From the sequence record OR538032.1: DNA of 64,000 nt; one strand, 5' to 3'. The notes below the pieces were generated by a model. That model had not been told where the DNA came from and searched no databases. It saw nothing but the letters and a program-made list of their open reading frames with translations. This document shows positions 14,483 to 28,179 of this stretch, in pieces; position 1 is the first letter of the stretch, and each line of letters begins with the position of its first letter. Position numbers and translations under genes: made by a program.

Positions 14483-15919
14483 TTAAAAGCTGTAGCGATC
14501 AACGCCTACAGTTTTCAGCATGATCTTGACTGGCTCAAGCTCACCACCTAACAGTGAAGTCAGGATAGATGGGCTACAACCCGATACCAGTGCAGTACCC
14601 GCTTCGCCAGCTTTAACCGGAACGTTGCCAAGACGACCACGAATGTTCCAGAAGACTAGTTGTGGCATTTCATAGCCAGCACGTGCGTACATAGCTTTGA
14701 TTGCGTCGAAGTTTGCACGTTCGCCGCGACCGTACCAGCCACCACCAGTATTTGCTTGGTCGAATTCCATGTCGCTCATGATAAGCAACTTAGTTGGCAT
14801 TTCTTCTTGTGAAAGATTTGCACGTTTTGCACGTTCTAACAGAACGTTGAAGCACTTACCGATGTTTGTGCTCATGTCTTCGCCTGAGCGATTCATGTTG
14901 TCAAGACGCTCTTTTAGTGAGCTACCGCGCAACTGGTGGAAGTGCGGATCGCTTGAGAACGAAATGAACTGATCTTTGAAGATGCCTTCATTGCGTTCAG
15001 CAACATAGATGCCAAGAGACATTGCAACTTGCTTACAAGTCACACCCGAACGATCTGTACCTGCGTTGATTGGCGTGCTCATAGAGCCAGATACGTCAAC
15101 AACAGGGATGATGCGCTCATCAGAGCCTTCCATGTAGTTCGGCAGAGCTTTCCATTGCTCGTTCGCTACAGACGCATTGCCATGACTAACGCTCTTAACG
15201 ACATCATATGGGAACAATGCACCAGCGTTGATCTTCGCTTCACCTTTTTGAAGTGACTCGATGTAGCTTGTGTAACGAGCAGAAGCGTTACGACCGAATG
15301 CTTGTTGATAACGAGCAGACGCTACAGATGGCAACTTACCAAAGTCGATTGCATCCCATTCTTGAGCACACATCTTCTGTTCAACAGTGTCAGACAAAAG
15401 TGCTAGAATCTTACGCCACTGCTTCGCAGTTACACCAAGAGACTTGATTGTGCGCTTGAACACATGACCGTTTTTGCTGTTTTCACGTGGGAACCACTTA
15501 GCAGCAAGACCGTTCTTGTCGTTTACAATCGCGTTTGACCACAATGTGATCGCGTCTTTCTCAAGACTTGTACCGAACGCAGAAATCAAGTCGTCGAAAC
15601 GACCTAGTTCTGGAATTTTCGACATTACAGCACGAGCTACGTCAGGCTGCTCATTACAAAGTTTAGTGAATAGAGTACGGAAAGTACCACGTTCACCCGC
15701 ACCACCGCGAACATCACGAGACCATAAAAGAATGCGTGTCGCTAGTTCGGGGTTTTCTGCAAACGCACGACCGAACAGTGTTTTAGACTGATCGTTACCA
15801 CGCATAGCAGCAATACCGAAGAACAAGTTTAGACACTCGTTACCTGAAGTGCTGTGAGTAACTGCACCGTTTGCTGTACGTGAATCGTTTGATTGCATAG
15901 CGTTCATAAATGCTGACAT
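14483..15919 (-). CDS. DUF2828 protein (TROVE/Ro60-like helical domain plus vWA)
   Basis: TANGAVTHSTSG, RDVRGGAGER, LAAKWFPRE; vWA MIDAS DVSGS, SDMEFD, VFWNI. Confidence 0.85.
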   Translation of the reverse strand: MSAFMNAMQSNDSRTANGAVTHSTSGNECLNLFFGIAAMRGNDQSKTLFGRAFAENPELATRILLWSRDVRGGAGERGTFRTLFTKLCNEQPDVARAVMSKIPELGRFDDLISAFGTSLEKDAITLWSNAIVNDKNGLAAKWFPRENSKNGHVFKRTIKSLGVTAKQWRKILALLSDTVEQKMCAQEWDAIDFGKLPSVASARYQQAFGRNASARYTSYIESLQKGEAKINAGALFPYDVVKSVSHGNASVANEQWKALPNYMEGSDERIIPVVDVSGSMSTPINAGTDRSGVTCKQVAMSLGIYVAERNEGIFKDQFISFSSDPHFHQLRGSSLKERLDNMNRSGEDMSTNIGKCFNVLLERAKRANLSQEEMPTKLLIMSDMEFDQANTGGGWYGRGERANFDAIKAMYARAGYEMPQLVFWNIRGRLGNVPVKAGEAGTALVSGCSPSILTSLLGGELEPVKIMLKTVGVDRYSF

Positions 15920-15967
15920 TGTTTATTCCTCATATTAAATTGCTGTAAAATGTCGTTTTGATGTGAT

Positions 15968-15996
15968 GATTATACACGGATTTGAACCCGTGTAAA
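15968..15996 (-). promoter_or_regulatory. T4-type early promoter for the DUF2828 gene
   Basis: GTTTAC-N17-TATAAT with TG and upstream A-tract. Confidence 0.8.
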
Positions 15997-16010
15997 CACT
16001 TTTTTCAATT

Positions 16011-16325
16011 TTATCGAAAATTCATTCGTGTGAGATTCGTACCGTTTTCGTAAATCTCAACGAGAACACGACCGCCCGTTTCGTAAGACGTGCGAAGAGA
16101 ACGATAACCATGCTCTTCGAAGAATGTACGAATAATAGTCGCACCACGCTTGTCTTTATCAGCAGCGTGAATAGGCACTTTCACGATGATAGGGAAACTA
16201 GACCCCGACTCAACTGCGTGCATGAATTCTTTCTCACATTCGCTCGTGTAATGCTCGGTAAGAATTCGTTTTTCTTCTGCTTCACGAGCGTGAATTTGTT
16301 GTTTGAGTTCATTATGATTAATCAT
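16011..16325 (-). CDS. hypothetical protein
   Basis: 104-aa ORF, coupled start/stop. Confidence 0.7.
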   Translation of the reverse strand: MINHNELKQQIHAREAEEKRILTEHYTSECEKEFMHAVESGSSFPIIVKVPIHAADKDKRGATIIRTFFEEHGYRSLRTSYETGGRVLVEIYENGTNLTRMNFR

Positions 16326-16657
16326 TGAAACCCCGCTTGTTTGTTTTCTCGAATTGTCAATTTGACAAAAGAATATGAGTAATCTCTCATATCACGCGGA
16401 TCGCCAGAGTAATGTCCGAACTGTGCGTCGAAGTTATGAAAACCCTCGCGTCGCATGACGCCTTTGATGAGAGACATCATTTCATCACAACATTCATTGC
16501 GGTCAACATTCACCTGAATCGTGATTGGAAACTGAAACCCAGCAACGCCACCGATTTTACGTTCGATTGCTTTGCGCATTTCAACTACGAAGAGTTCTTC
16601 ACGAGTTGAGCGATTCTGTTTGACTTTTTGAATTAATGTATCGTATAAATTACCCAT
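16322..16657 (-). CDS. hypothetical protein
   Basis: AGGA RBS before ATG 16657. Confidence 0.7.
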   Translation of the reverse strand: MGNLYDTLIQKVKQNRSTREELFVVEMRKAIERKIGGVAGFQFPITIQVNVDRNECCDEMMSLIKGVMRREGFHNFDAQFGHYSGDPRDMRDYSYSFVKLTIRENKQAGFQ

Positions 16658-17024
16658 CAATATATTCCTTAATCGGCTTAGAAAAGTGACGAATACAAGA
16701 ACTGTCAAGTCGTTTACGACCATCACCATCTATGTCTGGTAGCGTGTAATCGTCATTAAACGGCTGACCGCTTTCTTTCGCAATCTCATAGGAATCGGCT
16801 CGATTGAAGTATTCACCACAATAGTTGATAAAACCTTGACCGCGATCACCGAGTTCGTTTCGATGTTCATATGTACAACCTAGTTCTTTCAATAACTTAA
16901 AGACTGATTGCATGTTTCGACCGAAATGGCAGCTATCAGCAACAACAATGTCTCGCTGTTCGCCGTTCGGTAGCGTTACTCGAATTGCATTAGCAGCAGA
17001 CGATATTACATTGACGTGCGACAT
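16650..17024 (-). CDS. conserved phage hypothetical protein
   Basis: GFINYCGEYFNRADSYEIA motif. Confidence 0.7.
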   Translation of the reverse strand: MSHVNVISSAANAIRVTLPNGEQRDIVVADSCHFGRNMQSVFKLLKELGCTYEHRNELGDRGQGFINYCGEYFNRADSYEIAKESGQPFNDDYTLPDIDGDGRKRLDSSCIRHFSKPIKEYIDG

Positions 17025-17362
17025 GTATCGTACCTCATAAAAATTGAACCAACGCGCTTATACTGACCAGAGTGAGAAAGCAACAGAGCCATTTTACTAT
17101 GACCAACAGGATTGCTTGTCACTAGAACAACAGTGCGCGGAAAATTACGATGATCAATCGCATGAGAGAGAATATCGTATCCCTCTCTACCAACATCATC
17201 ACCTAGATCGTTATCCATGAATAGCGTGATGTCAGTTAGATTTGTGTGCTTGACGAAATTCATACCGTCTTCGAATGTTCGAAGTACGAGTTTTTCATCA
17301 TCACGTACGTAATCTGACGTGAACTTATTAATATCACGCAGATCATCAATCATAACGTACAT
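17006..17362 (-). CDS. cyclic-phosphate-processing receiver-like domain protein
   Basis: MIDDLR, LFMDNDLGD, EGYDIL, VTSNPVG. Confidence 0.7.
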   Translation of the reverse strand: MYVMIDDLRDINKFTSDYVRDDEKLVLRTFEDGMNFVKHTNLTDITLFMDNDLGDDVGREGYDILSHAIDHRNFPRTVVLVTSNPVGHSKMALLLSHSGQYKRVGSIFMRYDTCRTSM

Positions 17363-17424
17363 AATATTTCTCTTTCGTTAGTGTTGATAAATACATCATA
17401 CAGGTTCAACAAACGGAAGTCAAC

Positions 17425-17796
17425 ATGAACGACGAAAAAATTATTTCTTTTGATGAATATCTAAATGAAGGGTGGTTTGAAAGGCAATGGGCTAGATATA
17501 AGGCAGGTGAAGATGCACGCAGCATAAAGAAACTAGCTAAGATGCATACCAAGCTTCTGCACATCGAACAGAAAGCAAAGCAAAACAAATACCGATACGA
17601 AGCCGTACGGTTCAACTACGAACACATCAAAATGAATGTGCTCGATGCCAAGAAGATAATTAACAAGCTGCGATACAAGAAAGGAATTAGTCAAGAGCTA
17701 GTTCAGGCAATGGATAAACTAGACATTGAACTCGATAGACTCAACGACTTTGCCGTTGAGGGATTGCATGAGCTAATGATTCAACATAAGCTATAA
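17425..17796 (+). CDS. late protein, putative internal head protein
   Basis: GATAAATA at 17386-17393; N-terminus KIISFDEYLNE. Confidence 0.6.
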   Translation: MNDEKIISFDEYLNEGWFERQWARYKAGEDARSIKKLAKMHTKLLHIEQKAKQNKYRYEAVRFNYEHIKMNVLDAKKIINKLRYKKGISQELVQAMDKLDIELDRLNDFAVEGLHELMIQHKL

Positions 17797-17827
17797 AAGA
17801 AAAGCCCCGTTTTTGGGGCTTTTTTGT

Positions 17828-18040
17828 TTAATGTGAGTGGCGTAACTTCTTTTCGATCATTCGATCTACAATCGTGGAGTACATAAGATGCTCTTTGTAG
17901 TATTTCTCATCAACTCGGTTGCACTGGAATTGTCGAAAATCTTTGCGTAAGCGGGCAATGAATTTATTAAGTGCTTTGCGCACTTTGCAAACTTCAGACA
18001 GTTCCATGCTTTTTAGTGTATCTTCAGAAAGTATTTCCAT
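17828..18040 (-). CDS. hypothetical protein
   Basis: GAGG RBS, 70 aa. Confidence 0.65.
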   Translation of the reverse strand: MEILSEDTLKSMELSEVCKVRKALNKFIARLRKDFRQFQCNRVDEKYYKEHLMYSTIVDRMIEKKLRHSH

Positions 18041-18069
18041 GATTGTTCACCTCTTAGTTAATAGAATAC

Positions 18070-18114
18070 GGGAGACACGGGAATCGAACCCATTGCCTTG
18101 ACCACATATCTCCC
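18070..18114 (-). ncRNA. 45-nt anticodon-less tRNA-like element
   Basis: GGGAGAT/GTCTCCC acceptor plus ATGGG-TTCGATT-CCCGT T-arm with 14-nt linker. Confidence 0.6.
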
Positions 18115-18138
18115 ACTGAGAGTTACGCCAATCTGAGG

Positions 18139-18369
18139 TTAGTGTGCTAGACGCATCAAACGGCGCATACGTTCGCGTTCAGATAAATCTTCCAAATTTT
18201 CTTGTTTCACCTCTTTGATTTCTTCTTCGGGTTCTTCAGCTTCCTTTTTGATTTTTTCAGCATCGGGACCGATGTTTTTCCAAAGCGAAGCATTTCGCCA
18301 GTTATCGTTAAAACCATTACCTAAACCGCGCCCTTCACGCGCATGAGATTTTTGATGAATGTTTTTCAT
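18139..18369 (-). CDS. charged hypothetical late protein
   Basis: 76-aa ORF, TAATG coupling. Confidence 0.65.
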   Translation of the reverse strand: MKNIHQKSHAREGRGLGNGFNDNWRNASLWKNIGPDAEKIKKEAEEPEEEIKEVKQENLEDLSERERMRRLMRLAH

Positions 18370-18575
18370 TATTCGTTAGATTTCTTTGTTACTTGTCTTG
18401 CTATGCCAACAGCAGCAGCACCAGCAGCTACTTTAGCACCTGTTTTTGCCGCCTTACCGGCTTTTTTAGCGCCCGACTTGATACGATCTTTTACAGAACG
18501 TTTCTTTTTCTTTTTGTCTTCTGGGCGCGACTCTTCGATTTCTGACATGAATTTGTCAAAGGTTTTCTCACTCAT
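18369..18575 (-). CDS. Lys/Ala-rich small late protein, putative internal head protein
   Basis: CTAAATA at 18606-18612, GGAG RBS; N-terminus MSEKTFDKFMSEIEE. Confidence 0.65.
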   Translation of the reverse strand: MSEKTFDKFMSEIEESRPEDKKKKKRSVKDRIKSGAKKAGKAAKTGAKVAAGAAAVGIARQVTKKSNE

Positions 18576-18612
18576 GACCTATCTCCAGTTAATTGAGTTC
18601 ATTTGTATTTAG

Positions 18613-18990
18613 TCATGAGAAAATGTGTTTTCGGCTCAACTGCACATCAAATTCATTTTCGAAGCGACAGCGTTCAGTCCCGTAAAGTACATCATCAAGC
18701 GTGAATCGTTTTCGCTTTCGTGTGTGAAGGTTCATATAACGCTCTAGAGCAGTGTCTGAGTCGAATTCAATACGTTCACAACGTCTTTGTTCGGATGTCT
18801 GTGAATAATCGCTTACAGTGCGATACAGAAACAATCCGCGTACCACTACTGCGTTAAGTGTATTTGAACTTTTGATTGTCACGCCGTCAATATTTTCATA
18901 ACGACTCAAGGTAAAGATTATCTCTGAGTCTGGCATTTCAGCGACGCGCTTCATTTTGGATATTGATGTTCGTTTGTTTGATTTGTACAT
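18613..18990 (-). CDS. hypothetical protein
   Basis: GAGG RBS before ATG 18990; promoter TTTATA-N17-TACAGT upstream. Confidence 0.65.
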   Translation of the reverse strand: MYKSNKRTSISKMKRVAEMPDSEIIFTLSRYENIDGVTIKSSNTLNAVVVRGLFLYRTVSDYSQTSEQRRCERIEFDSDTALERYMNLHTRKRKRFTLDDVLYGTERCRFENEFDVQLSRKHIFS

Positions 18991-19038
18991 AGTTATCACC
19001 TCATAATGACTGTACATGATTTATCATGCGCTATAAAC

Positions 19039-19062
19039 AAAAAAACCTGCTCAAGGCAGGTT
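19039..19062 (-). terminator. terminator ending the tRNA/ncRNA operon
   Basis: AACCTGCC-TTGA-GCAGG-T7. Confidence 0.75.
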
Positions 19063-19074
19063 CTAATGTGCAAT

Positions 19075-19325
19075 ACACAGACATTCGAGAAGTGTTTTAT
19101 CGTCTTTGCTTAAATCTCAATTGACTATCTCGATGTTTCTCATCGAGAAAATACCCATGATTCGGCATGAGACCTATTTCGTTTTACAGTACGAACACCG
19201 TCTTAATGGTCATTTCCTACCACGAGAATGCGACAGGCTCACGTCATCACTGAGAAAGCAGCTAGTGCGCCTCATTACTATTAAAGTTTGCTTCTTTGAT
19301 TAGTAATATTGCTGTACAATGTCTT
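19075..19325 (-). ncRNA. about 250-nt structured ncRNA carrying the CWGCA motif (paralog 1)
   Basis: terminal stem AGACATT/AATGTCT; 3' block homologous to 21350-21566. Confidence 0.7.
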
Positions 19326-19335
19326 ATTGCGAATT

Positions 19336-19424
19336 TGGCGGAGATACTGGGAATCGAACCCAGAGAACGCTATTAACGTCCGACACCTTAGCAGGGTGCT
19401 GTCATACCTTTAGACCATATCTCC
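19336..19424 (-). tRNA. tRNA-Ser(GCT)
   Basis: cloverleaf, long variable arm, encoded CCA. Confidence 0.9.
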
Positions 19425-19429
19425 GTAGA

Positions 19430-19609
19430 TCATTTCTTACCACGCTCTGCTTTGCTAATCTCGACAGCAGCGATTTGCGCGTTGGCTTCTTTCTCAGTGT
19501 CATGAGTACCAAGTACTCGACCTTTAGATGAAAGAGCAACCCATTTGTCGCCACGCTTCTCGACTTTCTCAACAAGCTTGTGGTATTCATCAAACGTTTT
19601 AAGTTTCAT
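19430..19609 (-). CDS. 59-aa late protein MKLKTFDEYHKLVE..., putative internal head protein
   Basis: perfect TATAAATA at 19635-19642, GAGGGA RBS; translated by hand. Confidence 0.75.
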   Translation of the reverse strand: MKLKTFDEYHKLVEKVEKRGDKWVALSSKGRVLGTHDTEKEANAQIAAVEISKAERGKK

Positions 19610-19865
19610 TTGTCATCCCTCAGTTAGTTTATTGTATTTATAACTGAACGACTTTTAAACAGTGGCATGCTGCTCTCATGCTCAGACACATATTTGCTCT
19701 TATTGCAGGCGTGTGCCACGCGCAGCGCAGATCCCTTTTGATAATTTAATGACCAGCGGGACTCTTAGCAGGTCTTACACATAGCCTTTCAGCTATATCT
19801 TCTTTTAAGACCATAGTGTCGTACGGTCTAATCACTCTCTTTCGATTCGCGTTGCTAAGTGAATT

Positions 19866-19942
19866 TGGTGCCCAACCCGAGATTCGAACTCGGATCATCT
19901 AGTGTTTGAAACTAGCGCCTCTGCCAATTGGACTAGTTGGGC
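19866..19942 (-). tRNA. tRNA-Leu(CAA), short variable arm
   Basis: cloverleaf, CCA. Confidence 0.9.
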
Positions 19943-20057
19943 TTGAATGAGCTGCCGCAACTCTTTAATCCCTAACGCCTGTCAGCTTTCGCCCGGCTGA
20001 GACCGTTTTCAACGGCGGTAGTCTAGCTTCGTGTAGAACGCGGCTTATGCTAGAGTT

Positions 20058-20134: not shown

Positions 20135-20136
20135 AG

Positions 20137-21349: not shown

Positions 21350-21566
21350 TACAGACAATACCGAAGTGTTTTTCGTCTTTTGCATTAATCGGAGTTGACT
21401 AGCTTATTGATTCTCAACAAGCAAATATCGTCTGTTTCAGCGACGCGCCTATCTGACTATTTCTAGGCAGAGAGAATCTTTCCTTTCAAGCTGCGCCGAA
21501 GCACTGCCCAGGTTAAGATCATTACCATTTTTAAGTAATTTTCAATTGTTTGCTGTATATTGTCTC
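21350..21566 (-). ncRNA. about 215-nt structured ncRNA carrying the CWGCA motif (paralog 2)
   Basis: terminal stem AGACAATA/TATTGTCT; 3' block homologous to 19075-19325. Confidence 0.7.
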
Positions 21567-22174: not shown

Positions 22175-22180
22175 GTTACT

Positions 22181-22293
22181 GAGTGTTATTACTTGCGTCG
22201 TCCAGACCAGAGATACCAACTCTGAAAGGGAATCGAACCCCAAACATTTCTTTTCGTAAGAAGAATATTAGTAATTGTTTGCTGAAAACACTC
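22181..22293 (-). ncRNA. circularly permuted tRNA-like RNA (YrlA/Y-RNA-like architecture)
   Basis: terminal stems with bulged TTCAGCAAACA, internal T-arm GGGG-TTCGATT-CCC, loop-closed acceptor-like stem. Confidence 0.7.
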
Positions 22294-22376: not shown

Positions 22377-22395
22377 ATTATTCTTAAATTATCTT

Positions 22396-22694: not shown

Positions 22695-22769
22695 TGGCGC
22701 TCCGTGTAGGACTCGAACCTACAGCCTTTCGGTTAACAGCCGATTGCTCCACCATTGAGCTAACGAAGC
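22695..22769 (-). tRNA. tRNA-Asn(GTT)
   Basis: cloverleaf, G73, CCA. Confidence 0.9.
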
Positions 22770-22772
22770 GTA

Positions 22773-23150
22773 TTATTTATTCGATGCGTGTTCTTCTCTG
22801 TGGCAATTCGCACATAACATGATGCATTTATCAAGCTCTGGGACAATTCTCTCCCATCGTTTGCAACCGCCACTAGCAATGCCAAAGTCTTTCCCATTCG
22901 GGTCTGTATGATGAAACTCTAATGCTTCAATGCACTTATCATACCCACATCGTTCACAGCAACCACCTTTATATTCAACCGCCCTCAATTTAGTACGGCG
23001 TCTATATGATACCACTGCTTCTTTATTCTTTTGTTTTCTCTCGTCATCTGTTCGAAATTTCAATTTCTTACCGTTGTATAAACCAGCACATCGACGACTA
23101 CAGAATTTATTGTTGTGTGTTTCTGCACCACACTCTAAGCATTTATTCAT
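22773..23150 (-). CDS. HNH endonuclease (homing-endonuclease-like)
   Basis: CLECG...FCSRRC zinc motif; CERCG...EFHH...LCANCHREEH. Confidence 0.85.
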   Translation of the reverse strand: MNKCLECGAETHNNKFCSRRCAGLYNGKKLKFRTDDERKQKNKEAVVSYRRRTKLRAVEYKGGCCERCGYDKCIEALEFHHTDPNGKDFGIASGGCKRWERIVPELDKCIMLCANCHREEHASNK

Positions 23151-23290
23151 CTGAATTACTCAATTAATAGTTAATAAAGTAACCCAAAGGAGAGTATAGC
23201 CCGCCACATTCGTAAGTGAATGACTCTATTACTACTTAGCAATTACATTCAAGCGTTACCAAGAACCATGCCACGTAGCTTTAAATTAAA

Positions 23291-23349
23291 CAGCAATCCT
23301 TTTCTCTTTTTCCAAATAAAAGTTTTGTATTGTTTGCTGAAAGATTGCT
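23291..23349 (-). ncRNA. short hairpin RNA carrying the CWGCA motif
   Basis: AGCAATCTTT/AAGGATTGCT stem, CAGCAAACAAT bulge. Confidence 0.55.
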
Positions 23350-23355
23350 TAATTC

Positions 23356-23429
23356 TGGCAGGGACATAGAGATTCGAACTCTAACGAACGGGTTTGGAAT
23401 CCGTCATGCTGCCGTTACATCATGTCCCT
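23356..23429 (-). tRNA. tRNA-Trp(CCA)
   Basis: cloverleaf, G73, CCA. Confidence 0.9.
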
Positions 23430-23435
23430 AAAATT

Positions 23436-23509
23436 TGGTAGCCCCAGACAGACTCGAACTGTCAACGTGCGATTATCGGTCGCGTGTTTTACCGTTAAAC
23501 TATGGAGCT
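23436..23509 (-). tRNA. tRNA-Ile(GAT)
   Basis: cloverleaf; C at position 33. Confidence 0.85.
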
Positions 23510-23573
23510 AAAGTGAGCACATTTCAGTGCTCGTGTTAATCGGTTAAGTGACTAAACTTCCCGGTTAACTAAT

Positions 23574-23672
23574 TGGCGGAAGACTAGGGATTCGAACCCT
23601 AACATCACCTCCCGGTGACCGACGGTTTTCAAGACCGTTGCCGCTACCCAGAATCTTTCGGCTAAGCCTTCC
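23574..23672 (-). tRNA. tRNA-Ser(TGA), enlarged D-loop
   Basis: long variable arm, G73, CCA; 99 nt. Confidence 0.85.
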
Positions 23673-23679
23673 ATTAATT

Positions 23680-23756
23680 TGGTTGCGTGGGGCTGGATTC
23701 GAACCAGCGTTCTCCGGCTTATGAGACCGACGAGATGACCACTTCTCTACCCCGCA
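23680..23756 (-). tRNA. tRNA-Met(CAT), initiator-like
   Basis: TGCGGGG acceptor with bulge, fMet-like D arm, CAT anticodon. Confidence 0.75.
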
Positions 23757-23764
23757 ATTATTCA

Positions 23765-23853
23765 ACAGCTTGCGTTCTTTGGTCTGTTTATCGCTGTCTG
23801 AACTGAGTTCGCCGAGCGATCAATAGATTAAGTTAAATTGCAGTATGCAAGCT
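23765..23853 (-). ncRNA. about 87-nt RNA carrying the CWGCA motif
   Basis: AGCTTGC/GCAAGCT stem followed by ATACTGCAA; inner ATCGCT/AGCGAT stem. Confidence 0.6.
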
Positions 23854-23858
23854 AAATT

Positions 23859-23944
23859 TGGTGGAGCGTAGAGGAATCGAACCTCTCTTCCCATTACGGG
23901 ACACGGATTTACAGTCCGCTGCGCCACCTTGGCGCATACGCTCC
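23859..23944 (-). tRNA. tRNA-Tyr(GTA)
   Basis: long variable arm, CCA. Confidence 0.9.
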
Positions 23945-23950
23945 GGAATT

Positions 23951-24024
23951 TGGTACTCGATACGGGAGTCGAACCCGTCCTACTTCCTTGAAAGGGAAGT
24001 GACCTACCGATAGTCGAATCGAGC
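23951..24024 (-). tRNA. tRNA-Glu(TTC)
   Basis: cloverleaf, CCA. Confidence 0.9.
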
Positions 24025-24087
24025 ATTAAATTGTATATTGATTTGCAAGCTAATCAACTCGCAAAGCGATACACAATGTATCTAATT

Positions 24088-24164
24088 TGGTACGCCGCCC
24101 TGGACTCGAACCAGACACCTGAGAGTTAAAAGCTCCCTGCTCTTCCATGATGAGCTACCGACGC
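24088..24164 (-). tRNA. tRNA-Lys(TTT)
   Basis: cloverleaf, CCA. Confidence 0.9.
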
Positions 24165-24175
24165 ATTATAAAATC

Positions 24176-24250
24176 TGGTGGGTCGCAAGAGATTCGAACT
24201 CTCACCGTTCTGGTTAAAAGCCAGATGTACTACCGTTATACGAACGACCC
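24176..24250 (-). tRNA. tRNA-Lys(TTT), second divergent copy
   Basis: cloverleaf, CCA. Confidence 0.9.
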
Positions 24251-24256
24251 AGAATG

Positions 24257-24331
24257 TGGTGCACCCCCTCGGAATCGAACCGAGCACTGCGGGACTTCAA
24301 TCCGCCGCTTTTCCTGATAAGCTAAGGGTGC
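24257..24331 (-). tRNA. tRNA-Phe(GAA)
   Basis: cloverleaf, CCA. Confidence 0.9.
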
Positions 24332-24341
24332 ATGGTACGCA

Positions 24342-24418
24342 TGGTACGCATGAAGAGATTCGAACTCTTAACTTCTGGCTTCTAAGACCAGTGCCTCTGC
24401 CAATTGGGCTACATGCGC
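24342..24418 (-). tRNA. tRNA-Leu(TAG), short variable arm
   Basis: cloverleaf, CCA. Confidence 0.9.
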
Positions 24419-24454
24419 ATTATTCGTTTTTGAACGTTACTTCGTTCTTCTTCA

Positions 24455-24650
24455 TTGTACATGATGTTTATATCGTTGTAAACATCGTTTTTGAAAAATT
24501 TTCATTCAGTTTTGAATGAGATTTCGCTTTTCTCTATTGTACATGATGTTTTCGTCATTGTAAACATCTTTCTGAATTTATTTTGAAGAACTTAACGTTT
24601 TCATTTTTCTATGTGTTAATCTTAACACTCGCTCAAGACATCTTAAACAC
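24455..24650 (-). promoter_or_regulatory. three tandem early promoters driving the downstream tRNA block
   Basis: two near-duplicate TTTACA-N17-TACAAT and one TTTAAG-N17-TAAGAT. Confidence 0.7.
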
Positions 24651-24728
24651 TAATTTGTGAAAAAGTTCGTTAAATTCTATCATCACGACAGTACTTAACG
24701 AGATACGGTCCTAAGCGTATCATATCAA

Positions 24729-24856
24729 TTCAGAATGGTGAGACTTGAACTCACTTCGAGTAATAGCGTAAACTAACAGTTGTTGCCAGAGGCTATCAAT
24801 TATTCTCTACCGAGTATGTTGCAACTCTGCATTTCCCCATTTCTAGGCATTCTGAA
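24729..24856 (-). ncRNA. 128-nt RNA with tRNA-like acceptor and T-arm and expanded interior
   Basis: TTCAGAATG/CATTCTGAA stem; GTGAG-TTCAAGT-CTCAC; no CCA. Confidence 0.6.
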
Positions 24857-24859
24857 ATA

Positions 24860-24935
24860 TGGCACCCAATACAAGATTCGAACTTGTAACCTTCGCCTTC
24901 GTAGGGCGCTGCTCTTCCAATTGAGCTAATCGGGC
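24860..24935 (-). tRNA. tRNA-Arg(ACG)
   Basis: cloverleaf, CCA. Confidence 0.9.
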
Positions 24936-24943
24936 ATTAAAAC

Positions 24944-25020
24944 TGGTCCGTGACAAGCGATTCGAACGCTTAACTTCTCCGCCCCAAACGGAGTACTCTA
25001 CCAGATTGAGCTAGTCACGG
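24944..25020 (-). tRNA. tRNA-Pro(TGG)
   Basis: C1-G72, G37, CCA. Confidence 0.9.
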
Positions 25021-25029
25021 ATTTTAAAT

Positions 25030-25103
25030 TGGTCGGGACGAAGAGACTCGAACTCTTACCACATGCTCCCAAAGCATGAACGCTGCCTTTACGCCACGTC
25101 CCG
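25030..25103 (-). tRNA. tRNA-Pro(TGG), second divergent copy
   Basis: C1-G72, CCA. Confidence 0.9.
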
Positions 25104-25471
25104 TTTGTTCTTTAACTTTGTTTATCATACTCTGCTTTCAAAGTACGTTAAACAAAATTTTTTGATTTCCTTCGCCCATAAAAAAGGACGCTACGTGCGT
25201 CCTCAAGTATACTTCTATGTTATACTATTGGACTACGTTTGTGGAGACCACTCTTGTTTCGCACACGGATTCGCTAGATACACGAATTCTGAGCGCAGAA
25301 AATCGCTGCGTAAAATCATATCAGAATGTGTATTCGAATGTGTCATGGAAACTCTCTAAACGTTAAAAATAAAAATGTTTTTGTTTGTATAATAGTACTT
25401 ATAACACCAAATTTGACGATTTGCGGTATTTTCGCAGAAAATTGAAAAAAATTCAACTTTCTGCGATTTTC

Positions 25472-25705
25472 TTATCGACCTAGGTGTTTTCGCTTGTTCA
25501 TTTCAACGAGAATTTCATCGTTGTAATGGCGGTTCAGTTCAACATACTTCTTGTGTTGTTCTGAAGTCAACTCGTTAGTGTCATTCAGATGCTTCAAGAA
25601 CCCAAGAGGCTTGCGAAACGACTTGCGATATTCGTTCAGACGCTCGTCCGTTAGATTATGCAGTTGTTTCGGAGTCAGTAACGTTTTATTGATGTCAAAA
25701 CTCAT
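25472..25705 (-). CDS. hypothetical protein
   Basis: GAGG RBS before ATG 25705. Confidence 0.65.
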   Translation of the reverse strand: MSFDINKTLLTPKQLHNLTDERLNEYRKSFRKPLGFLKHLNDTNELTSEQHKKYVELNRHYNDEILVEMNKRKHLGR

Positions 25706-25729
25706 GTTGTACCTCACTTGTTATTAAAA

Positions 25730-25845
25730 TGGTAGTCGGGGCTGGATTCGAACCAGCGACCACGTGCTTAACAGGCAATTGAAGGAGTGCTGGAGCGATA
25801 CTTGTCAGTATCATTCTTCGTGCTCTACCACTGAGCTACCCGACT
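25730..25845 (-). ncRNA. tRNA-Asn(GTT) scaffold with 41-nt motif insertion in the anticodon stem
   Basis: deleting 25778-25818 gives a regular 75-nt cloverleaf with CCA. Confidence 0.8.
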
Positions 25846-25850
25846 ATGAA

Positions 25851-26372
25851 TTATTTAACTTTGAACTTCAAATTACGCCAGTCAAAGTTTCGTTTGTTCT
25901 TTGTGTTGTAGAACGTGCCCCAATCAATAGCAATCGGACAGTTCTTACTACCTACACGAGCGATAAATACATCGTGAGTCTCGCTGTAACGCTCTCTAAG
26001 CTCCTTTAAACGCTTATCGTAGTTAGCGATATACTCAGCACACGCTTTGTTGTAAGCTGCTTTAGAGAAGCGTTCGTTACTCGAAAATACATTACCTAGA
26101 TAAGGTCGAATAACACGAACTCGTTCTTTAGACCAACCCATACTAAAGCTGTTTTCAATCTCACCTGAGATTTCACCAGTCTTCTTACATCTAGCAAGAA
26201 TGACCCAGCAACGTTCACGCCGAAAATCTTTTCGTACATACACGTTAACGTGCTTGTCAATGTACTCTTGATAACGAGCGTTATACTCAGCACGCAGTTT
26301 ATTGCGCACTTCAGGCGACATTGCAGCTCGTTCTTCTTTCGAAAACGCTTGTGCAAATTTCAATGGTTTCAT
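25851..26372 (-). CDS. basic hypothetical protein (173 aa)
   Basis: GAGGA RBS before ATG 26372. Confidence 0.7.
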   Translation of the reverse strand: MKPLKFAQAFSKEERAAMSPEVRNKLRAEYNARYQEYIDKHVNVYVRKDFRRERCWVILARCKKTGEISGEIENSFSMGWSKERVRVIRPYLGNVFSSNERFSKAAYNKACAEYIANYDKRLKELRERYSETHDVFIARVGSKNCPIAIDWGTFYNTKNKRNFDWRNLKFKVK

Positions 26373-26385
26373 TATAATTTCCTCT

Positions 26386-26625
26386 TGGCGCCGCTCGTGT
26401 GAATCGAACACACGTCAAACACAACACCTCGTCCACCCAATTAGAGTTTCGAAGTAAGAGCTAATCAGCATTTCGGAGCAATCGAGCGTTATTTCTACGA
26501 GTGAGCTTTCGACAACTCACACGCACTTTCTACTCGGTCCCAGTGATTCGGTACCAACGCAGGTTGCGAACCTACGTCTGCACTAATGTTGGGAAAACAC
26601 TGCGTATTGTACACCAGTTAGCGGC
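26386..26625 (-). ncRNA. 240-nt RNA with a tmRNA-like tRNA-like domain
   Basis: GCCGCT/AGCGGC acceptor, G73-CCA, GAC-GTGTG-TTCGATT-CACAC, P2-like ACAATAC/GTGTTGT. Confidence 0.7.
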
Positions 26626-26628
26626 ATT

Positions 26629-26859
26629 TTAAAGATAGCTATCAAAGACAGCATCATCAACTTCTTCAATATTGATGTCAGCGTAACATTCGTTCGCAAT
26701 TGCTTGAATCTCACCTATTGAAACTGTACCTGAGTACAAAACAACAGCATCATTCGGAATCACGACATCACACATGTATTTGTTAAACATTGCAGTTCTG
26801 AAATCAGAATCAACAGAGTAACCGTGCAACGACGTGATAACTAGCAATTTATGTGACAT
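26629..26859 (-). CDS. hypothetical protein
   Basis: GAGGA RBS; promoter TTGACA-N17-TAGTAT at 26890-26918. Confidence 0.7.
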   Translation of the reverse strand: MSHKLLVITSLHGYSVDSDFRTAMFNKYMCDVVIPNDAVVLYSGTVSIGEIQAIANECYADINIEEVDDAVFDSYL

Positions 26860-26938
26860 AATGTTTTCCTCGTGTAGTTGATAATGTGTATACTACACGT
26901 TGATGAAACGCATGTCAACAACTTTTTCAAATTATTTT

Positions 26939-27015
26939 TGGTAGCCCCTCTCGGATTCGAACCGAGAACCTGACGATTATGAGTCGTCTGCTACTACCGT
27001 TACAGCTAAGGGGCT
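26939..27015 (-). tRNA. tRNA-Ile2(CAT, lysidine type) or tRNA-Met
   Basis: AGCCCCT acceptor and GACGA-CTCATAA-TCGTC arm resemble ileX. Confidence 0.8.
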
Positions 27016-27382
27016 ATCGTTCTAGAAATCTACCAACTTTAGCAGCGAAGATGTTTGCTTCTTCGGCAATCAAAGCAGTTGATTTTATTTGATGAAAAGC
27101 GTCTTGTTGATGCAGAACATCTAGTTTACCAGCGCATTTCATCAGTTCTTTTACTGATTGCATAATCTCAATGTTATCAAGCTGACTAGCATCAGGGTGA
27201 TAATTGAGACTATCTAAGACAGGGAGTACTTGTTGATAGTAACCCATGCCGATGAAGTTTATCATAAGTCTGTATTGCATTTCAACAGCAAATGTACAAT
27301 ATTTTCGAAGATTGCGCTTTACAATCTCACAACGATGCAATATACAATCAAGCTCGTCATTTATGTCATCAAACTTATTCAT
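27014..27382 (-). CDS. hypothetical protein
   Basis: GAGG RBS before ATG 27382. Confidence 0.6.
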   Translation of the reverse strand: MNKFDDINDELDCILHRCEIVKRNLRKYCTFAVEMQYRLMINFIGMGYYQQVLPVLDSLNYHPDASQLDNIEIMQSVKELMKCAGKLDVLHQQDAFHQIKSTALIAEEANIFAAKVGRFLER

Positions 27383-27395
27383 AAAACCTCGAAAG

Positions 27396-27517
27396 TGGTG
27401 GAGAGTACGGGATTCGAACCACGTGACCAAAAGATTTACCTAGTTAGGGTTTGCAGCATGAATGCTTATCAGAATTCTTTAACATTCTTTTGCTCTACCA
27501 GACTGAGCTAACTCTCC
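27396..27517 (-). ncRNA. tRNA-scaffolded RNA A (motif module in place of anticodon loop)
   Basis: GGAGAGT/ACTCTCC-ACCA, D arm, T arm, about 50-nt insert. Confidence 0.75.
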
Positions 27518-27523
27518 AGAATT

Positions 27524-27641
27524 TGAGGGTGAAGTACAGGACTCGAACCTGCGACCTCCGGCGTGCATAAAATGCAGCATGAAATCTTAACAGACTTCTA
27601 TTGTTTAGACCGGCATTCTAACCAACTGAACTAACTTCACC
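27524..27641 (-). ncRNA. tRNA-Asp-like scaffolded RNA B
   Basis: GTTCAGTTGGTTAGAATGCCGG...CACGCCGGAGGTCGCAGGTTCGAGTCC with insert in the anticodon loop. Confidence 0.75.
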
Positions 27642-27649
27642 ATAAAAAC

Positions 27650-27782
27650 ATATTGAGCAGGGTGCAGGACTCGAACCTGCGTCACGATCTTGAAATGATA
27701 TGCGAATTGATTGCAGAATACAAACTTAACAGCTTGCGTTTATGCTACGTGTGCTAGCCACTACACCAACCCTGCTCAATAT
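27650..27782 (-). ncRNA. tRNA-scaffolded RNA C with 14-bp terminal stem
   Basis: ATATTGAGCAGGGT inverted repeat, D and T arms, motif insert. Confidence 0.75.
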
Positions 27783-28032
27783 GTTCTTGGGCGTGCTTAC
27801 GCAGATCGATTCTTCACTACGTAAGCACAAAATCCTCTAGTTTATATTTGCCTTAGCTAATCACAACACAATCTGGAATCGTGCGCTTTAATTACGGGAT
27901 GAATGACCCGTTCGCATGTGATTAGCGTAGAACAGCTACGCACCGTTTCTTCTTCAATGTCCAAGGCAAAGAGGACTATGAATACTAGTGCGAGAAGATA
28001 TACAATCAAATTGCTCACCTCGCTTAATAAGT

Positions 28033-28179
28033 GAGAGTACATTGGTCGAGTGTAACGGAATCGAACCGTTCCCACGATCTCCCTATGATATGCGTAAATT
28101 GGTTGCTGAATATAATCATGTCTGATTACAGTATGCTACGTGTGCTGCCACTACACCAACACTCGACCAATGTACTCTC
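28033..28179 (-). ncRNA. tRNA-scaffolded RNA D with 21-bp terminal stem, paralog of C
   Basis: GAGAGTACATTGGTCGAGTGT perfect inverted repeat, D and T arms, motif insert. Confidence 0.75.

What the first reader, a model, noticed from the sequence alone, without database searches (positions are those of the whole stretch)
14483..28179. Candidate new system: Ro60/TROVE-like DUF2828 protein plus 12 copies of a covarying bipartite RNA motif in the tRNA operon
Seen on the - strand: the motif G-N5-NTN-CWGCA, whose G-N5 pairs with a partner N5-C followed by WG. Copies (strand 1 / partner): 15.94 kb GACATT-TTA-CAGCA/AATGTC-AG; 19.32 GACATT-GTA-CAGCA/AATGTC-TG; 19.70 GGCACA-CGC-CTGCA/TGTGTC-TG; 21.56 GACAAT-ATA-CAGCA/ATTGTC-TG; 22.29 GAGTGT-TTT-CAGCA/ACACTC-AG; 23.34 GCAATC-TTT-CAGCA/GATTGC-TG; 23.85 GCTTGC-ATA-CTGCA/GCAAGC-TG; 25.79 GTATCG-CTC-CAGCA/TGATAC-TG; 27.46 GCATTC-ATG-CTGCA/GAATTC-TG (one mismatch); 27.58 GATTTC-ATG-CTGCA/GAAGTC-TG; 27.72 GTTTGT-ATT-CTGCA/GCAAGC-TG; 28.11 GATTAT-ATT-CAGCA/GTAATC-AG. 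The helix sequence varies freely while pairing is kept, and the flanking bases are nearly invariant, which is typical of a protein-binding site. Eleven copies are non-coding; one overlaps the start of the DUF2828 gene. Established: Ro60/Rsr (TROVE plus vWA) binds a stem in Y RNAs, and bacterial YrlA RNAs mimic tRNA and are linked to RtcB repair. Inference: DUF2828 is the cognate binder and these RNAs are a phage Y-RNA-like family with a different recognition motif.
Basis: partly seen in the sequence, partly recalled or inferred. Interest (0 to 1): 0.95.

Follow-up and report, generated by a model that had tools for sequence, protein, structure and literature searches.

The report
Phage Ro60-like protein's partner RNAs
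The repeated motif is real. It marks an apparently undescribed, very widespread family of small phage RNAs, some tRNA-shaped, that sit beside the gene for a Ro60-like (DUF2828) protein in phages of many bacterial groups and are most likely that protein's binding partners.

Summary
Observation confirmed and extended. The window is a KVP40-like Vibrio phage.

- **Copies:** eleven strict copies of the bipartite motif lie on the minus strand between 15.9 and 28.2 kb. Shuffles give about 1.8 for both strands. A twelfth copy has one mismatch that relatives repair.
- **Helices:** they covary in orthologues.
five copies are capped hairpins inserted in the anticodon region of tRNA-like RNAs (KVP40 'pseudo-tRNAs'). 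Seven are long-range stems closing RNAs of 35-246 nt. One of these encloses the ribosome-binding site and start codon of the DUF2828 gene.
- **Protein:** it models as a full-length Ro60 fold (HEAT ring plus vWA, intact MIDAS).
- **Linkage:** the same module is a 6-bp variable helix, then N-U-A-CAGCAA, with the 3' strand followed by N-G. It sits on the gene strand, usually within a few hundred nt of DUF2828 genes. This holds in about 100 independent loci, from Felixounavirus, Campylobacter, Listeria, Staphylococcus, Bacillus and Mycobacterium phages and from MAGs. Long forms are permuted tRNAs like YrlA.
- **Prior art:** no Rfam family reaches threshold, and the canonical GNCGAA Ro site is absent. 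The protein's Ro60 likeness was already noted (Bas63 gp130, a Ppl counter-defence factor). I found no description of the RNA module.

Direct binding is inferred, not shown. Verdict: a new variant of the Ro60/Y-RNA kind.

The parts
14483..15919 (-). Gene for the Ro60-like protein (478 aa; Pfam DUF2828 + DUF7788; KVP40.0300 homologue)
   Evidence: Pfam hits. AlphaFold model with pLDDT 78.8. The top 8 Foldseek PDB hits are all Ro60/TROVE over the full length (TM 0.46-0.58, E 2e-7 to 1e-4). MIDAS residues D275, S277, S279, T351 and D383 are invariant.
15913..15954 (-). Copy 15.94: GACATT-TTA-CAGCA...AATGTC-AG. The stem encloses the Shine-Dalgarno sequence (GAGGA), and the AUG lies in the 3' strand. 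Candidate autoregulatory operator.
   Evidence: Sequence. A promoter (TTTACA, 16-nt spacer, TATAAT; 11 of 12 matches) lies at 15996-15969. The copy is conserved in VH7D and 1.081.O. The hairpin alone is weak (-3.5 kcal/mol, z 0.1).
19078..19323 (-). Copy 19.32: a 246-nt RNA closed by GACATT/AATGTC. It is the last element of the tRNA operon and a paralogue of copy 21.56.
   Evidence: An intrinsic terminator lies at 19064-19042. Orthologue alignment.
19683..19717 (-). Copy 19.70: a 35-nt hairpin, GGCACA-CGC-CTGCA...TGTGTC-TG. Doubtful member of the family.
   Evidence: The helix covaries (GGCATA/TATGTC in nt-1, ACTACA/TGTAGT in D480). There is no U at position 8 and the pentamer is not conserved.
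21352..21564 (-). Copy 21.56: a 213-nt RNA closed by GACAAT/ATTGTC
   Evidence: There is a compensatory change to GATAAT/ATTATC in 1.081.O.
22179..22293 (-). Copy 22.29: a 115-nt RNA closed by GAGTGT/ACACTC. It contains a T-arm-like hairpin and a D-loop-like hairpin, so it is a permuted tRNA-like RNA.
   Evidence: RNAalifold on 6 orthologues shows covarying T-like and D-like hairpins.
23291..23348 (-). Copy 23.34: a minimal 58-nt form, with a 6-bp stem and an A/U-rich loop
   Evidence: GCAATC/GATTGC here becomes GTAATC/GATTAC in four relatives (compensatory).
23766..23852 (-). Copy 23.85: an 87-nt RNA closed by GCTTGC/GCAAGC
25733..25845 (-). In-line tRNA-like RNA (KVP40 Pseudo-3) with the module hairpin at 25788-25813. 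The hairpin is inserted in the 5' strand of the anticodon stem. An intact Asn-type anticodon hairpin (TGC-CTGTTAA-GCA) is retained.
   Evidence: Rfam tRNA hit of 49.8 bits with an insert. Sequence. The anticodon hairpin is identical in D480 while its flanks differ.
27399..27517 (-). In-line tRNA-like RNA (Pseudo-4) with the module hairpin at 27452-27477, inserted after anticodon-loop position 38. GUU is retained.
   Evidence: tRNAscan-type annotation calls the orthologue in phage 1.081.O tRNA-Asn(GTT).
27528..27640 (-). In-line tRNA-like RNA (Pseudo-5) with the module hairpin at 27573-27598
27647..27785 (-). In-line tRNA-like RNA with a 17-bp terminal stem, a D-arm (GUGUAGUGGCUAGCAC), the module hairpin at 27712-27737, and a T-arm
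   Evidence: Fold z-score -5.7. Orthologues show compensatory changes.
28033..28179 (-). In-line tRNA-like RNA with a 20-bp terminal stem, a D-arm, the module hairpin at 28104-28129, and a T-arm
   Evidence: Fold z-score -7.2. GTAATC/GATTAT here becomes GCTTAC/GTAAGT in D480.

Best explanation
The motif is the protein-binding module of a family of phage non-coding RNAs that partner the DUF2828/DUF7788 protein. That protein is a divergent Ro60 (TROVE-like HEAT ring plus vWA domain).

**The module.** It is a helix of exactly 6 bp with free sequence. The 5' strand runs on into single-stranded N-U-A-C-A-G-C-A-A. The 3' strand is followed by N-G, usually U-G. The fixed helix length would act as a ruler between the two single-stranded contacts.

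**The RNA bodies that carry it:**
- minimal stem-loops of about 55-60 nt (YrlB-like);
- permuted tRNAs (T-arm, closed acceptor hairpin, D-arm) with the RNA ends at the module (YrlA-like);
- in this phage and a few other lineages, 'in-line' tRNA-like RNAs in which the module is a capped hairpin in the anticodon region;
- larger RNAs of about 210-250 nt.

**The copy at the gene's own start.** It encloses the ribosome-binding site and AUG. It would let excess protein repress its own translation.

**Function.** By analogy with Ro60/Y RNA, the RNP would present a tRNA-shaped handle to tRNA- or RNA-processing and repair factors, or to host nucleases, during infection. The one functional datum for the protein family is counter-defence: Bas63 gp130 counters the Ppl system.

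**Status of each step.**
- Shown here: the motif, its covariation, its gene linkage, the protein fold, and the tRNA-like bodies.
- Inferred: direct binding, autoregulation, and the cellular role.
For: **Motif reality**
- Window: 11 strict copies against 1.8 in shuffles.
- Orthologue covariation.

**Gene linkage, in three independent sets**
1. In 46 non-redundant phage loci, 81 of 1214 one-sided anchors on the gene strand have a perfect 6-nt partner followed by WG. Seven controls (opposite strand, reversed partner, complemented partner, shifted hexamer) give 5-13. 36 of 46 loci carry at least one element, and 38 of 89 elements lie within 300 nt of the gene. Three more loci have a CG 3' flank.
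2. In 56 loci from bacterial genome assemblies and MAGs there are 103 hits on the gene strand against 9 on the opposite strand; 42 of 56 loci are positive.
3. A motif-first scan of IMG/VR left two helix positions unconstrained. They are Watson-Crick paired in 101 of 124 matches, where chance gives 1 in 16. A DUF2828 homologue lies in the fetched stretch (15 kb or less) for 39 matches, always on the same strand, at a median distance of 315 nt. For comparison, only 711 of 50,697 phage records hold a homologue at all.

**Named phages.** EC6, CP81, Listeria AG20, Mycobacterium MsGreen, a Staphylococcus phage, Bacillus Thrax2 and Bas63 each carry 2-5 elements beside the gene.

**Protein.** The top eight fold matches are Ro60/TROVE over the full length, and the MIDAS site is intact.

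**RNA bodies.** The permuted tRNA bodies align to the tRNA-like part of Rfam YrlA (39.3 bits in MsGreen) but not to its Rsr-binding stems.

**Leader copies.** In several lineages the last element ends 2-10 nt before the Shine-Dalgarno sequence of the gene.

**Negative control.** In 50 kb of T4 that includes its tRNA cluster, rnaC and rnaD, there are 3 scattered hits and none in the RNA region.
Against: - No binding, expression or processing data exist for any of these RNAs.
- In PhageMaP, gp130 expressed alone from a plasmid rescued T7 on the Ppl strain (PMC11482910). At least that activity therefore does not need the phage's own RNAs.
- Seven of the 46 loci showed no element with my descriptor.
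- 65 of the 101 fully paired motif-first matches had no homologue in the partial stretch fetched. In this window, though, elements lie up to 12 kb from the gene.
- The operator hairpin is thermodynamically marginal on its own.
- Absence of the motif from genomes without the protein was tested on only part of T4.
Confidence: 0.72

Rival explanations
1. The module is a processing or binding signal for a different factor, and DUF2828 is linked only indirectly. The factor could be a host or phage endoribonuclease that matures the tRNA/sRNA transcripts, or the PF04308 RNase H-like protein encoded next door. DUF2828 might, for example, recognise the tRNA-like bodies or the 3' ends instead.
For: - Many copies sit in polycistronic tRNA operons, 8-12 nt after a tRNA 3' end.
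- In closing-stem copies the RNA ends would coincide with the module.
- A PF04308 gene directly follows the DUF2828 gene in Schizotequatroviruses.
- Ro60 proteins also bind RNA 3' tails non-specifically (established knowledge of Ro60).
Against: - The module tracks the DUF2828 gene even where few or no tRNA genes are nearby (MsGreen, the Staphylococcus phage).
- The hosts range from Mycobacterium to Campylobacter, so no single host RNase is expected to share such a specific site.
- PF04308 is not seen next to the gene in the other annotated loci.
- The capped-hairpin version keeps the UG inside a closed loop, which does not fit a simple end-processing signal.
Confidence: 0.15
2. The five in-line copies are introns of real tRNAs (two would give tRNA-Asn GUU). 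The motif is then the recognition element of a phage-encoded, protein-dependent tRNA splicing system, using enzymes such as a nuclease, the cREC or 2H phosphoesterase, and an RNA ligase.
For: - Removing 41 nt from copy 25.79, or 46 nt from copy 27.46, leaves a perfect Asn anticodon arm.
- The anticodon hairpin is conserved in D480 while its flanks drift.
- tRNA-finding annotation calls the 1.081.O orthologue tRNA-Asn(GTT).
- RNA-end-processing genes are nearby.
Against: - The same module closes RNAs with no exons to join: minimal stem-loops, permuted tRNAs, an mRNA leader.
- The insertion point differs in each in-line copy (28/29, after 38, inside the loop).
- Copies 27.72 and 28.11 have 17-20-bp terminal stems and no anticodon arm to restore.
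- Copy 25.79 has discriminator A, unlike the phage's ordinary tRNA-Asn.
- A normal tRNA-Asn is already present.
Confidence: 0.07
3. The copies are decaying tRNA fragments, or a chance cluster, with no function.
For: - Positions 1-15 of the module (G1...U8 A9 CAGC A14 A15) mimic the numbering of a tRNA 5' end.
- The region is full of tRNA-like debris.
Against: - Shuffle tests.
- Compensatory changes.
- Conservation of the same module next to the same gene in phages of at least six bacterial phyla.
Confidence: 0.02

Closest known systems
Bacterial Rsr (Ro60) with YrlA/YrlB Y RNAs (Rfam RF02553; Chen et al. 2014, PMC4201824)
   Same: - A ring-shaped Ro60-fold protein with a vWA/MIDAS domain is encoded next to several small RNAs on the same strand.
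- One RNA class is a permuted tRNA (T-arm, closed acceptor hairpin, D-arm) whose 5' and 3' ends form the protein-binding stem. A second class is a short RNA without the tRNA part.
- There is a 6-bp basal stem followed by a 5-nt internal loop on the 5' strand. YrlA's AUGCU fits the N-U-N-C-W pattern.
- Some members are linked to RtcB/RNA-ligase genes, for example Listeria phage AG20.
   Different: - The protein shares only 12-15% identity with solved Ro60 proteins. It is filed under DUF2828/DUF7788, not TROVE.
- Conserved letters lie outside the helix (UACAGCAA and a 3' N-G), whereas canonical Y RNAs have them inside it (GNCGAA(N)G).
- There is no second helix equivalent to YrlA's P2.
- No element reaches the RF02553 gathering score: the best scores are 31 and 39.3 bits against 69.
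- In-line (non-permuted) tRNA chimeras and an mRNA-leader copy are not described for YrlA.
Thermus phage phiLo Ro60 with Yrl1/Yrl2 (PMC12135203; PDB 9kop, 9l5y)
   Same: It is a phage-encoded Ro60 with adjacent Y-like RNAs, and it is the best structural match to the model of the window's protein. Binding of its RNAs was shown by EMSA and cryo-EM, together with a complex with host PNPase.
   Different: phiLo Ro60 is a sequence-recognisable TROVE protein, and its RNAs carry the canonical CGAA motif. The RNAs here do not.
Bas63 (Felixounavirus) gp130, a counter to the Ppl defence system (PhageMaP preprint, PMC11482910)
   Same: It belongs to the same protein family: 46% identity over the full length. 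It has the same position upstream of a tRNA array. The authors noted Ro60-like structure and guessed that some neighbouring tRNA genes are Y RNAs.
   Different: The RNAs were not identified. The four candidates found here lie between the annotated tRNAs, not among them. gp130 alone was sufficient in their T7 rescue assay.
Autogenous translational operators of T4-type phages (gp32, gp43, RegA)
   Same: In both cases the binding site for an RNA-binding protein overlaps the ribosome-binding site and start codon of that protein's own mRNA.
   Different: This is only an analogy of logic. The proteins and sites are unrelated, and repression has not been tested here.

Membership tests
Ro60/TROVE proteins | Ring of HEAT-like helical repeats followed by a vWA domain, seen over the full length | tested here: met
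   AlphaFold2 model (pLDDT 78.8, pTM 0.74). The Foldseek PDB top 8 are all Ro60/TROVE, with 510-565 aligned columns, TM 0.46-0.58 and probability 1.0.
Ro60/TROVE proteins | MIDAS metal site (DxSxS...T...D) in the vWA domain | tested here: met
   D275, S277, S279, T351 and D383 are invariant in 24 diverse homologues.
Ro60/TROVE proteins | Sequence-level match to the TROVE domain | tested here: not met
   Pfam reports only DUF2828 and DUF7788. A profile search against PDB sequences reaches phiLo TROVE only at E 0.17, over the MIDAS stretch.
Ro60/TROVE proteins | Binds Y RNA on the outer surface and RNA 3' ends in the central cavity | not testable with these tools
   Needs biochemistry or a structure of the complex.
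YrlA (Rfam RF02553) Y RNA-like | Score at or above the curated gathering threshold (69 bits) | tested here: not met
   The best score in the window is 31 bits, from a hit spanning two adjacent in-line elements. The MsGreen permuted element scores 39.3 bits. Nothing reaches the gathering threshold in 13 loci.
YrlA (Rfam RF02553) Y RNA-like | Permuted tRNA-like domain (T-arm, acceptor hairpin, D-arm) closed by a stem formed by the 5' and 3' ends | tested here: met
   Met by relatives: L046 9424-9554 and 9798-9926, L068 9287-9399, L082 11398-11523, L085 10546-10673, L087 6898-7019. In the window only copy 22.29 is of this type. Five other copies are non-permuted.
YrlA (Rfam RF02553) Y RNA-like | Conserved GNCGAA(N)G in the 5' strand (the proposed Rsr contact) | tested here: not met
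   The helix sequence is free, with more than 45 different hexamers. The conserved letters are UACAGCAA after the helix.
YrlA (Rfam RF02553) Y RNA-like | Encoded next to, and on the same strand as, the Ro60-type gene | tested here: met
Intron-containing tRNA | Removing the insert restores a canonical cloverleaf, and spliced product exists | tested here: inconclusive
   The cloverleaf is restored on paper for copies 25.79 and 27.46 only. No expression data are available. The module also occurs in RNAs with nothing to splice.

The most novel reading that the evidence does not exclude
The DUF2828 branch is a second, larger Ro-type RNP system with its own RNA code (a 6-bp ruler helix plus UACAGCAA plus a 3' N-G). 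The in-line forms would be working tRNA look-alikes carrying a protein handle. One example is a complete tRNA-Asn-type anticodon arm with the Ro-like protein docked beside it. The phage would use these as shielded decoys or sensors for host nucleases that cut tRNA anticodon loops, or as conditionally released spare tRNAs. Because DUF2828 proteins also occur in plants and other eukaryotes, the same kind of RNA partner might exist there.
Probability: 0.15. Interest if true: 0.92.

Novelty: new variant of a known kind. Interest (0 to 1): 0.8.

Why it matters
- **Size of the protein family.** It is very large: more than 7,700 clusters at 90% identity and 711 sequenced phages. It includes model and therapy-relevant phages such as Felix O1-like, Listeria P100/A511-like and KVP40-like phages, and mycobacteriophages. 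It had no known RNA ligand.
- **What the module offers.** A simple sequence-structure rule now predicts 2-12 partner RNAs per genome. It explains the long-standing 'pseudo-tRNAs with inserts' of KVP40-type phages.
- **A testable lead on counter-defence.** A member of the family counters the Ppl defence system (Bas63 gp130), and this work gives a concrete handle on how.
- **A comparison for Ro60 biology.** It offers a natural contrast: the same fold and the same tRNA mimicry, but a different recognition code.
- **Annotation.** These elements are currently unannotated, called tRNA, or overprinted by spurious small ORFs.

Tried and rejected
- **Known ribozymes or intron types.** I considered hammerhead, twister, HDV-like and group I introns, and archaeal bulge-helix-bulge introns. 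The conserved letters and the sizes do not fit. No Rfam model matches, even at E up to 5.
- **D-arm reading.** I considered that the motif is simply a tRNA 5' end (acceptor, U8, D-stem, A14). No complementary D-stem strand follows, and the permuted forms already have their own D-arm. I kept this only as a possible evolutionary origin.
- **Anticodon-loop mimicry by the hexaloop.** CUGUUAA appears in two copies, but it is not conserved in orthologues (UGUUAA, UGAUAA, UGACAA, UGUAUA).
- **A second helix between CAGCA and a payload box 'UGCUAAUG'.** The box recurs in some elements, but it is not general and RNAalifold does not support the pairing.
- **Covariance model of the whole family.** Not built. 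The body between the two halves varies from 6 to about 240 nt and comes in two topologies, so a single CM would miss most members. I used a descriptor-type scan instead.
- **Literature searches.** Searches for DUF2828, DUF7788 and their Pfam accessions, YrlA plus phage, Ro-like plus tRNA-like, and Ro60 plus anti-defence found no description of the RNA module.
- **Wrong accession.** A guessed accession for Bas63 was wrong. The correct one came from the paper.

Full report
**What the window is.** The sequence is 100% identical to Vibrio phage PG216 and about 97% identical to KVP40 over 19.2-28.2 kb. This is a Schizotequatrovirus, a T4-like phage. Everything discussed lies on the minus strand. 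ARAGORN finds 27 tRNAs. Rfam adds four more tRNA hits. Three of them are 113-119 nt long with an insert in the anticodon region, at 25733-25845, 27399-27517 and 27528-27640. KVP40's record annotates these three as tRNA-Pseudo-3, -4 and -5. ORF 14483-15919 carries Pfam DUF2828 plus DUF7788 and is called 'RNA-binding protein' in RefSeq KVP40.

**Checking the observation.** The one-sided pattern is not enriched: 24 matches against 15.8 expected. The bipartite pattern with pairing is enriched. There are 11 hits on the minus strand, all within 15954-28117, against a mean of 1.8 (maximum 6) for both strands in 200 dinucleotide shuffles.

- **Capped hairpins.** In copies 25.79, 27.46, 27.58, 27.72 and 28.11 the partner lies exactly 12 nt upstream: partner, then UGNNAA, then strand 1, then NUN, then CWGCA.
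- **Closing stems.** In copies 15.94, 19.32, 19.70, 21.56, 22.29, 23.34 and 23.85 the partner lies downstream and closes an RNA of 35-246 nt.

I collected orthologues from ValKK3, nt-1, VS2, VH7D, D480 and 1.081.O by sequence homology of the whole element, not by pairing. They show compensatory changes in copies 28.11, 27.72, 27.46, 23.34, 21.56 and 19.70. On the hairpin set, 95.4% of cells pair and 5 of 6 pairs change on both sides. The covariation score is 0.82 against 0.23 in shuffles (0 of 500 reach it), and slid controls score 0.18 or less.

Copy 19.70 has a covarying helix. It lacks the conserved U, and its pentamer drifts. I count it as doubtful.

**What carries the motif in this window.**
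- **Copies 25.79, 27.46 and 27.58** are tRNA-like RNAs with normal acceptor, D and T arms and the module in the anticodon region.
  - In 25.79 the module is an extra arm in the 5' strand of the anticodon stem. A complete Asn-type anticodon hairpin remains, and it is identical in D480 while its flanks differ.
  - In 27.46 the module follows loop position 38, and GUU is kept in all relatives.
- **Copies 27.72 and 28.11** have 17-bp and 20-bp terminal stems, a D-arm, the module hairpin and a T-arm. Their fold z-scores are -5.7 and -7.2.
- **Copy 22.29** contains covarying T-arm-like and D-loop-like hairpins.
- **Copy 23.34** is a bare 6-bp stem with an A/U-rich loop.
- **Copies 19.32 and 21.56** are paralogous RNAs of 246 and 213 nt. 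Copy 19.32 is followed by the operon's terminator.
- **Copy 15.94** lies just downstream of a near-consensus promoter. Its loop holds the Shine-Dalgarno sequence and its 3' strand holds the AUG of the DUF2828 gene. This arrangement is conserved in VH7D and 1.081.O.

**The protein.** Homologues are abundant: at least 7,785 clusters and 711 of 50,697 phage records. They occur in Felixounavirus, Campylobacter, Listeria, Staphylococcus, Enterococcus, Bacillus, Mycobacterium and other phages. In some mycobacteriophages the gene is already annotated 'Ro-like RNA binding protein'.

An AlphaFold2 model built from a 24-sequence alignment has pLDDT 78.8 and pTM 0.74. Its eight best PDB matches are all Ro60/TROVE proteins over the full length: Thermus phage phiLo Ro60, Xenopus and human Ro60, and Deinococcus Rsr. 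TM scores are 0.46-0.58 and E-values run from 2e-7 to 1e-4. The next matches are isolated vWA domains. The MIDAS residues are invariant. At sequence level the link to TROVE is not detectable.

**Linkage of RNA and gene.**
- *IMG/VR loci.* I fetched 80 IMG/VR loci around homologues that are 41-54% identical. They gave 125 strict motif hits against 10-14 in shuffles. Nearly all hits lie on the gene strand, and many lie directly beside the gene.
- *Test free of selection on pairing.* I used 46 non-redundant loci (805 kb). On the gene strand, 81 of 1214 one-sided anchors have a perfect 6-nt partner followed by WG within 10-150 nt. On the other strand the count is 12. Reversed, complemented or shifted controls give 5-13. 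36 of the 46 loci have at least one element, and 38 of 89 elements lie within 300 nt of the gene. Three further loci use a CG 3' flank.
- *Named phages.* EC6, CP81, Listeria AG20, MsGreen, a Staphylococcus phage and Bacillus Thrax2 each have 2-5 elements next to the gene.
- *Independent genome and MAG set.* 56 loci gave 103 hits on the gene strand against 9 on the opposite strand.
- *Converse direction.* A motif-first scan of IMG/VR left two helix positions free. It returned 124 matches, of which 101 have both free positions Watson-Crick paired (chance is 1 in 16). 39 have a DUF2828 homologue in the fetched piece of 15 kb or less, always on the same strand, at a median distance of 315 nt.
- *Negative control.* T4's syntenic 50 kb holds its tRNA cluster and the stable RNAs C and D but no DUF2828 gene. 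It has only three scattered background hits.

**The family consensus and architectures.** From 146 distinct elements the consensus is G1 R2 W3 U4 N5 N6 N7 U8 (85%) A9 (65%) C A (86%) G C A A15 (89%). An A-rich, G-poor stretch precedes the 3' strand, which is followed by U, A or C and then G. In Firmicutes phages the helix starts A-G.

Most elements are 50-63 nt with an essentially unstructured loop. Longer elements are permuted tRNAs: T-arm, acceptor hairpin, U8-A9, D-arm. The MsGreen example aligns to the tRNA-like part of Rfam YrlA at 39.3 bits, but not to YrlA's two Rsr-module helices.

Capped-hairpin, in-line forms also occur outside Schizotequatroviruses, in an Aeromonas-type phage contig and in two Lachnospiraceae-associated loci. 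There are five such hits on the gene strand and none on the opposite strand.

No Rfam 15 family other than tRNA and tmRNA reaches threshold in the window or in 13 other loci.

**Comparison with what is known.** Canonical bacterial Y RNAs (YrlA) were found next to TROVE-annotated genes. They carry GNCGAA(N)G in the 5' strand of the stem (PMC4201824). The phiLo phage Ro60 binds Yrl RNAs with the same CGAA motif (PMC12135203).

Here the helix sequence is free and the conserved letters lie beside it. The recognition code therefore differs, while the overall logic is the same: a Ro-fold protein, an adjacent same-strand RNA, tRNA mimicry, and short plus long RNA classes.

The jumbo-phage survey by Iyer et al. 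mentions ROT/TROVE proteins in some phages, with 'a tRNA-like partner' in cellular systems (PMC7824862). The PhageMaP preprint shows that Bas63 gp130 counters the Ppl defence, resembles Ro60, and lies upstream of tRNA genes. It speculates that some of those tRNAs are Y RNAs.

I confirmed that gp130 is a 46% identical homologue. Bas63 carries four motif elements between its annotated tRNAs, one of them a permuted tRNA. In that preprint, gp130 alone rescued T7 on Ppl. The RNAs may therefore not be needed for that particular effect.

I found no paper describing the RNA module. The searchable library does not cover subscription journals.

**Mechanism: shown and inferred.**
- *Shown:* a covarying 6-bp helix with conserved single-stranded flanks; its physical linkage to DUF2828 genes across very distant phages; the Ro60 fold of the protein; and tRNA-like bodies on many of the RNAs.
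- *Inferred, confidence about 0.7:* the protein binds the module, with the invariant helix length acting as a spacer between two sequence-specific contacts.
- *Inferred, about 0.5:* the leader copy represses translation of the protein's own mRNA. In KVP40-type phages it encloses the Shine-Dalgarno sequence and AUG. In several other lineages an element ends 2-10 nt before the Shine-Dalgarno sequence. On its own the hairpin is weak, which fits protein-dependent closure but is not independent support.
- *Inferred, about 0.4:* the RNP acts in RNA or tRNA surveillance, or in counter-defence. This rests on the Ro60 analogy, on the RtcB and RNA-ligase genes nearby in Listeria phages, and on the Bas63 phenotype.

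**Rivals.** The alternatives are an unrelated processing factor, a protein-dependent tRNA intron system, and functionless debris. They are set out separately with the evidence for and against each.

**Verdict.** The protein's kinship to Ro60 is not new. The RNA module, its three architectures (including the in-line tRNA chimeras that explain KVP40's 'pseudo-tRNAs') and its breadth appear to be new. I classify it as a new variant of the Ro60/Y-RNA kind, of high interest, and ready for direct tests in E. coli K-12 with phage Bas63.

Noticed in passing
window 28830-29285 (-): This ORF matches Pfam Acb1, the anti-CBASS 2H phosphodiesterase (E 1.7e-46). It is the homologue of T4 57B, which several records annotate as 'RNA ligase'.
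   Followed up: no
window 17006-17362 (-) and 13908-14438 (-): The first is a cREC (cyclic-phosphate-processing receiver) domain protein. The second is a PF04308 RNase H-like protein directly downstream of the DUF2828 gene. That gene pair is conserved in phages 1.081.O and D480.
   Followed up: partly
window 22773-23150 (-): An HNH-type endonuclease ORF is inserted in the middle of the tRNA array. It is absent from KVP40 at this position.
   Followed up: no
window ~26385-26610 (-), 24738-24860 (-), 18060-18112 (-): These are unannotated tRNA-like pieces without the motif. One is a T-arm followed by GAGCGGCGCCA at the end of a non-coding stretch of about 200 nt. One is a stem CAGAATG/CATTCTG enclosing a T-arm. 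One is an acceptor-plus-T-arm minihelix. Nothing in Rfam matches them.
   Followed up: partly
window 21782-21853 (-): This is a tRNA-Ala(UGC)-like gene (Rfam 44.9 bits) that ARAGORN does not call. KVP40 annotates it as 'tRNA-Pseudo-1'.
   Followed up: no
window 28033-28179 and 27647-27785 (-): The two largest in-line RNAs end in perfect 20-bp and 17-bp duplexes. Duplexes of this length are typical RNase III substrates, which suggests how these RNAs are cut out of the transcript.
   Followed up: no
window 15969-15996 (-): The promoter of the DUF2828 gene is built into a T-arm-like hairpin (TACACGGGTTCAAATCCGTGTA), as if recruited from a tRNA remnant.
   Followed up: no
motif positions 1-15, all copies: The conserved letters fall on tRNA numbering: a 7-nt acceptor strand, U8, A9, four nucleotides, then A14 and R15. 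This hints that the module itself descends from a tRNA 5' half.
   Followed up: partly
L029 8605-9054: A distant DUF2828-encoding phage contig carries a tmRNA gene (Rfam 75 bits) in the same RNA gene cluster.
   Followed up: no
L027 8557-8659 and L057 9629-9736: Two jumbo-phage contigs share a distinct motif-closed RNA body with a conserved core, GAACCUUUCUGG(U/A)GGGGAAAGCAAAAACUCGCC. Its nature is unknown.
   Followed up: no
L151 (Bas63) 12749-12901 and 12913-13023: Small opposite-strand 'hypothetical protein' ORFs (bas63_0137 and bas63_0138) overlie the motif RNAs at 12696-12763 and 12783-12908. They are probably annotation artefacts.
   Followed up: partly
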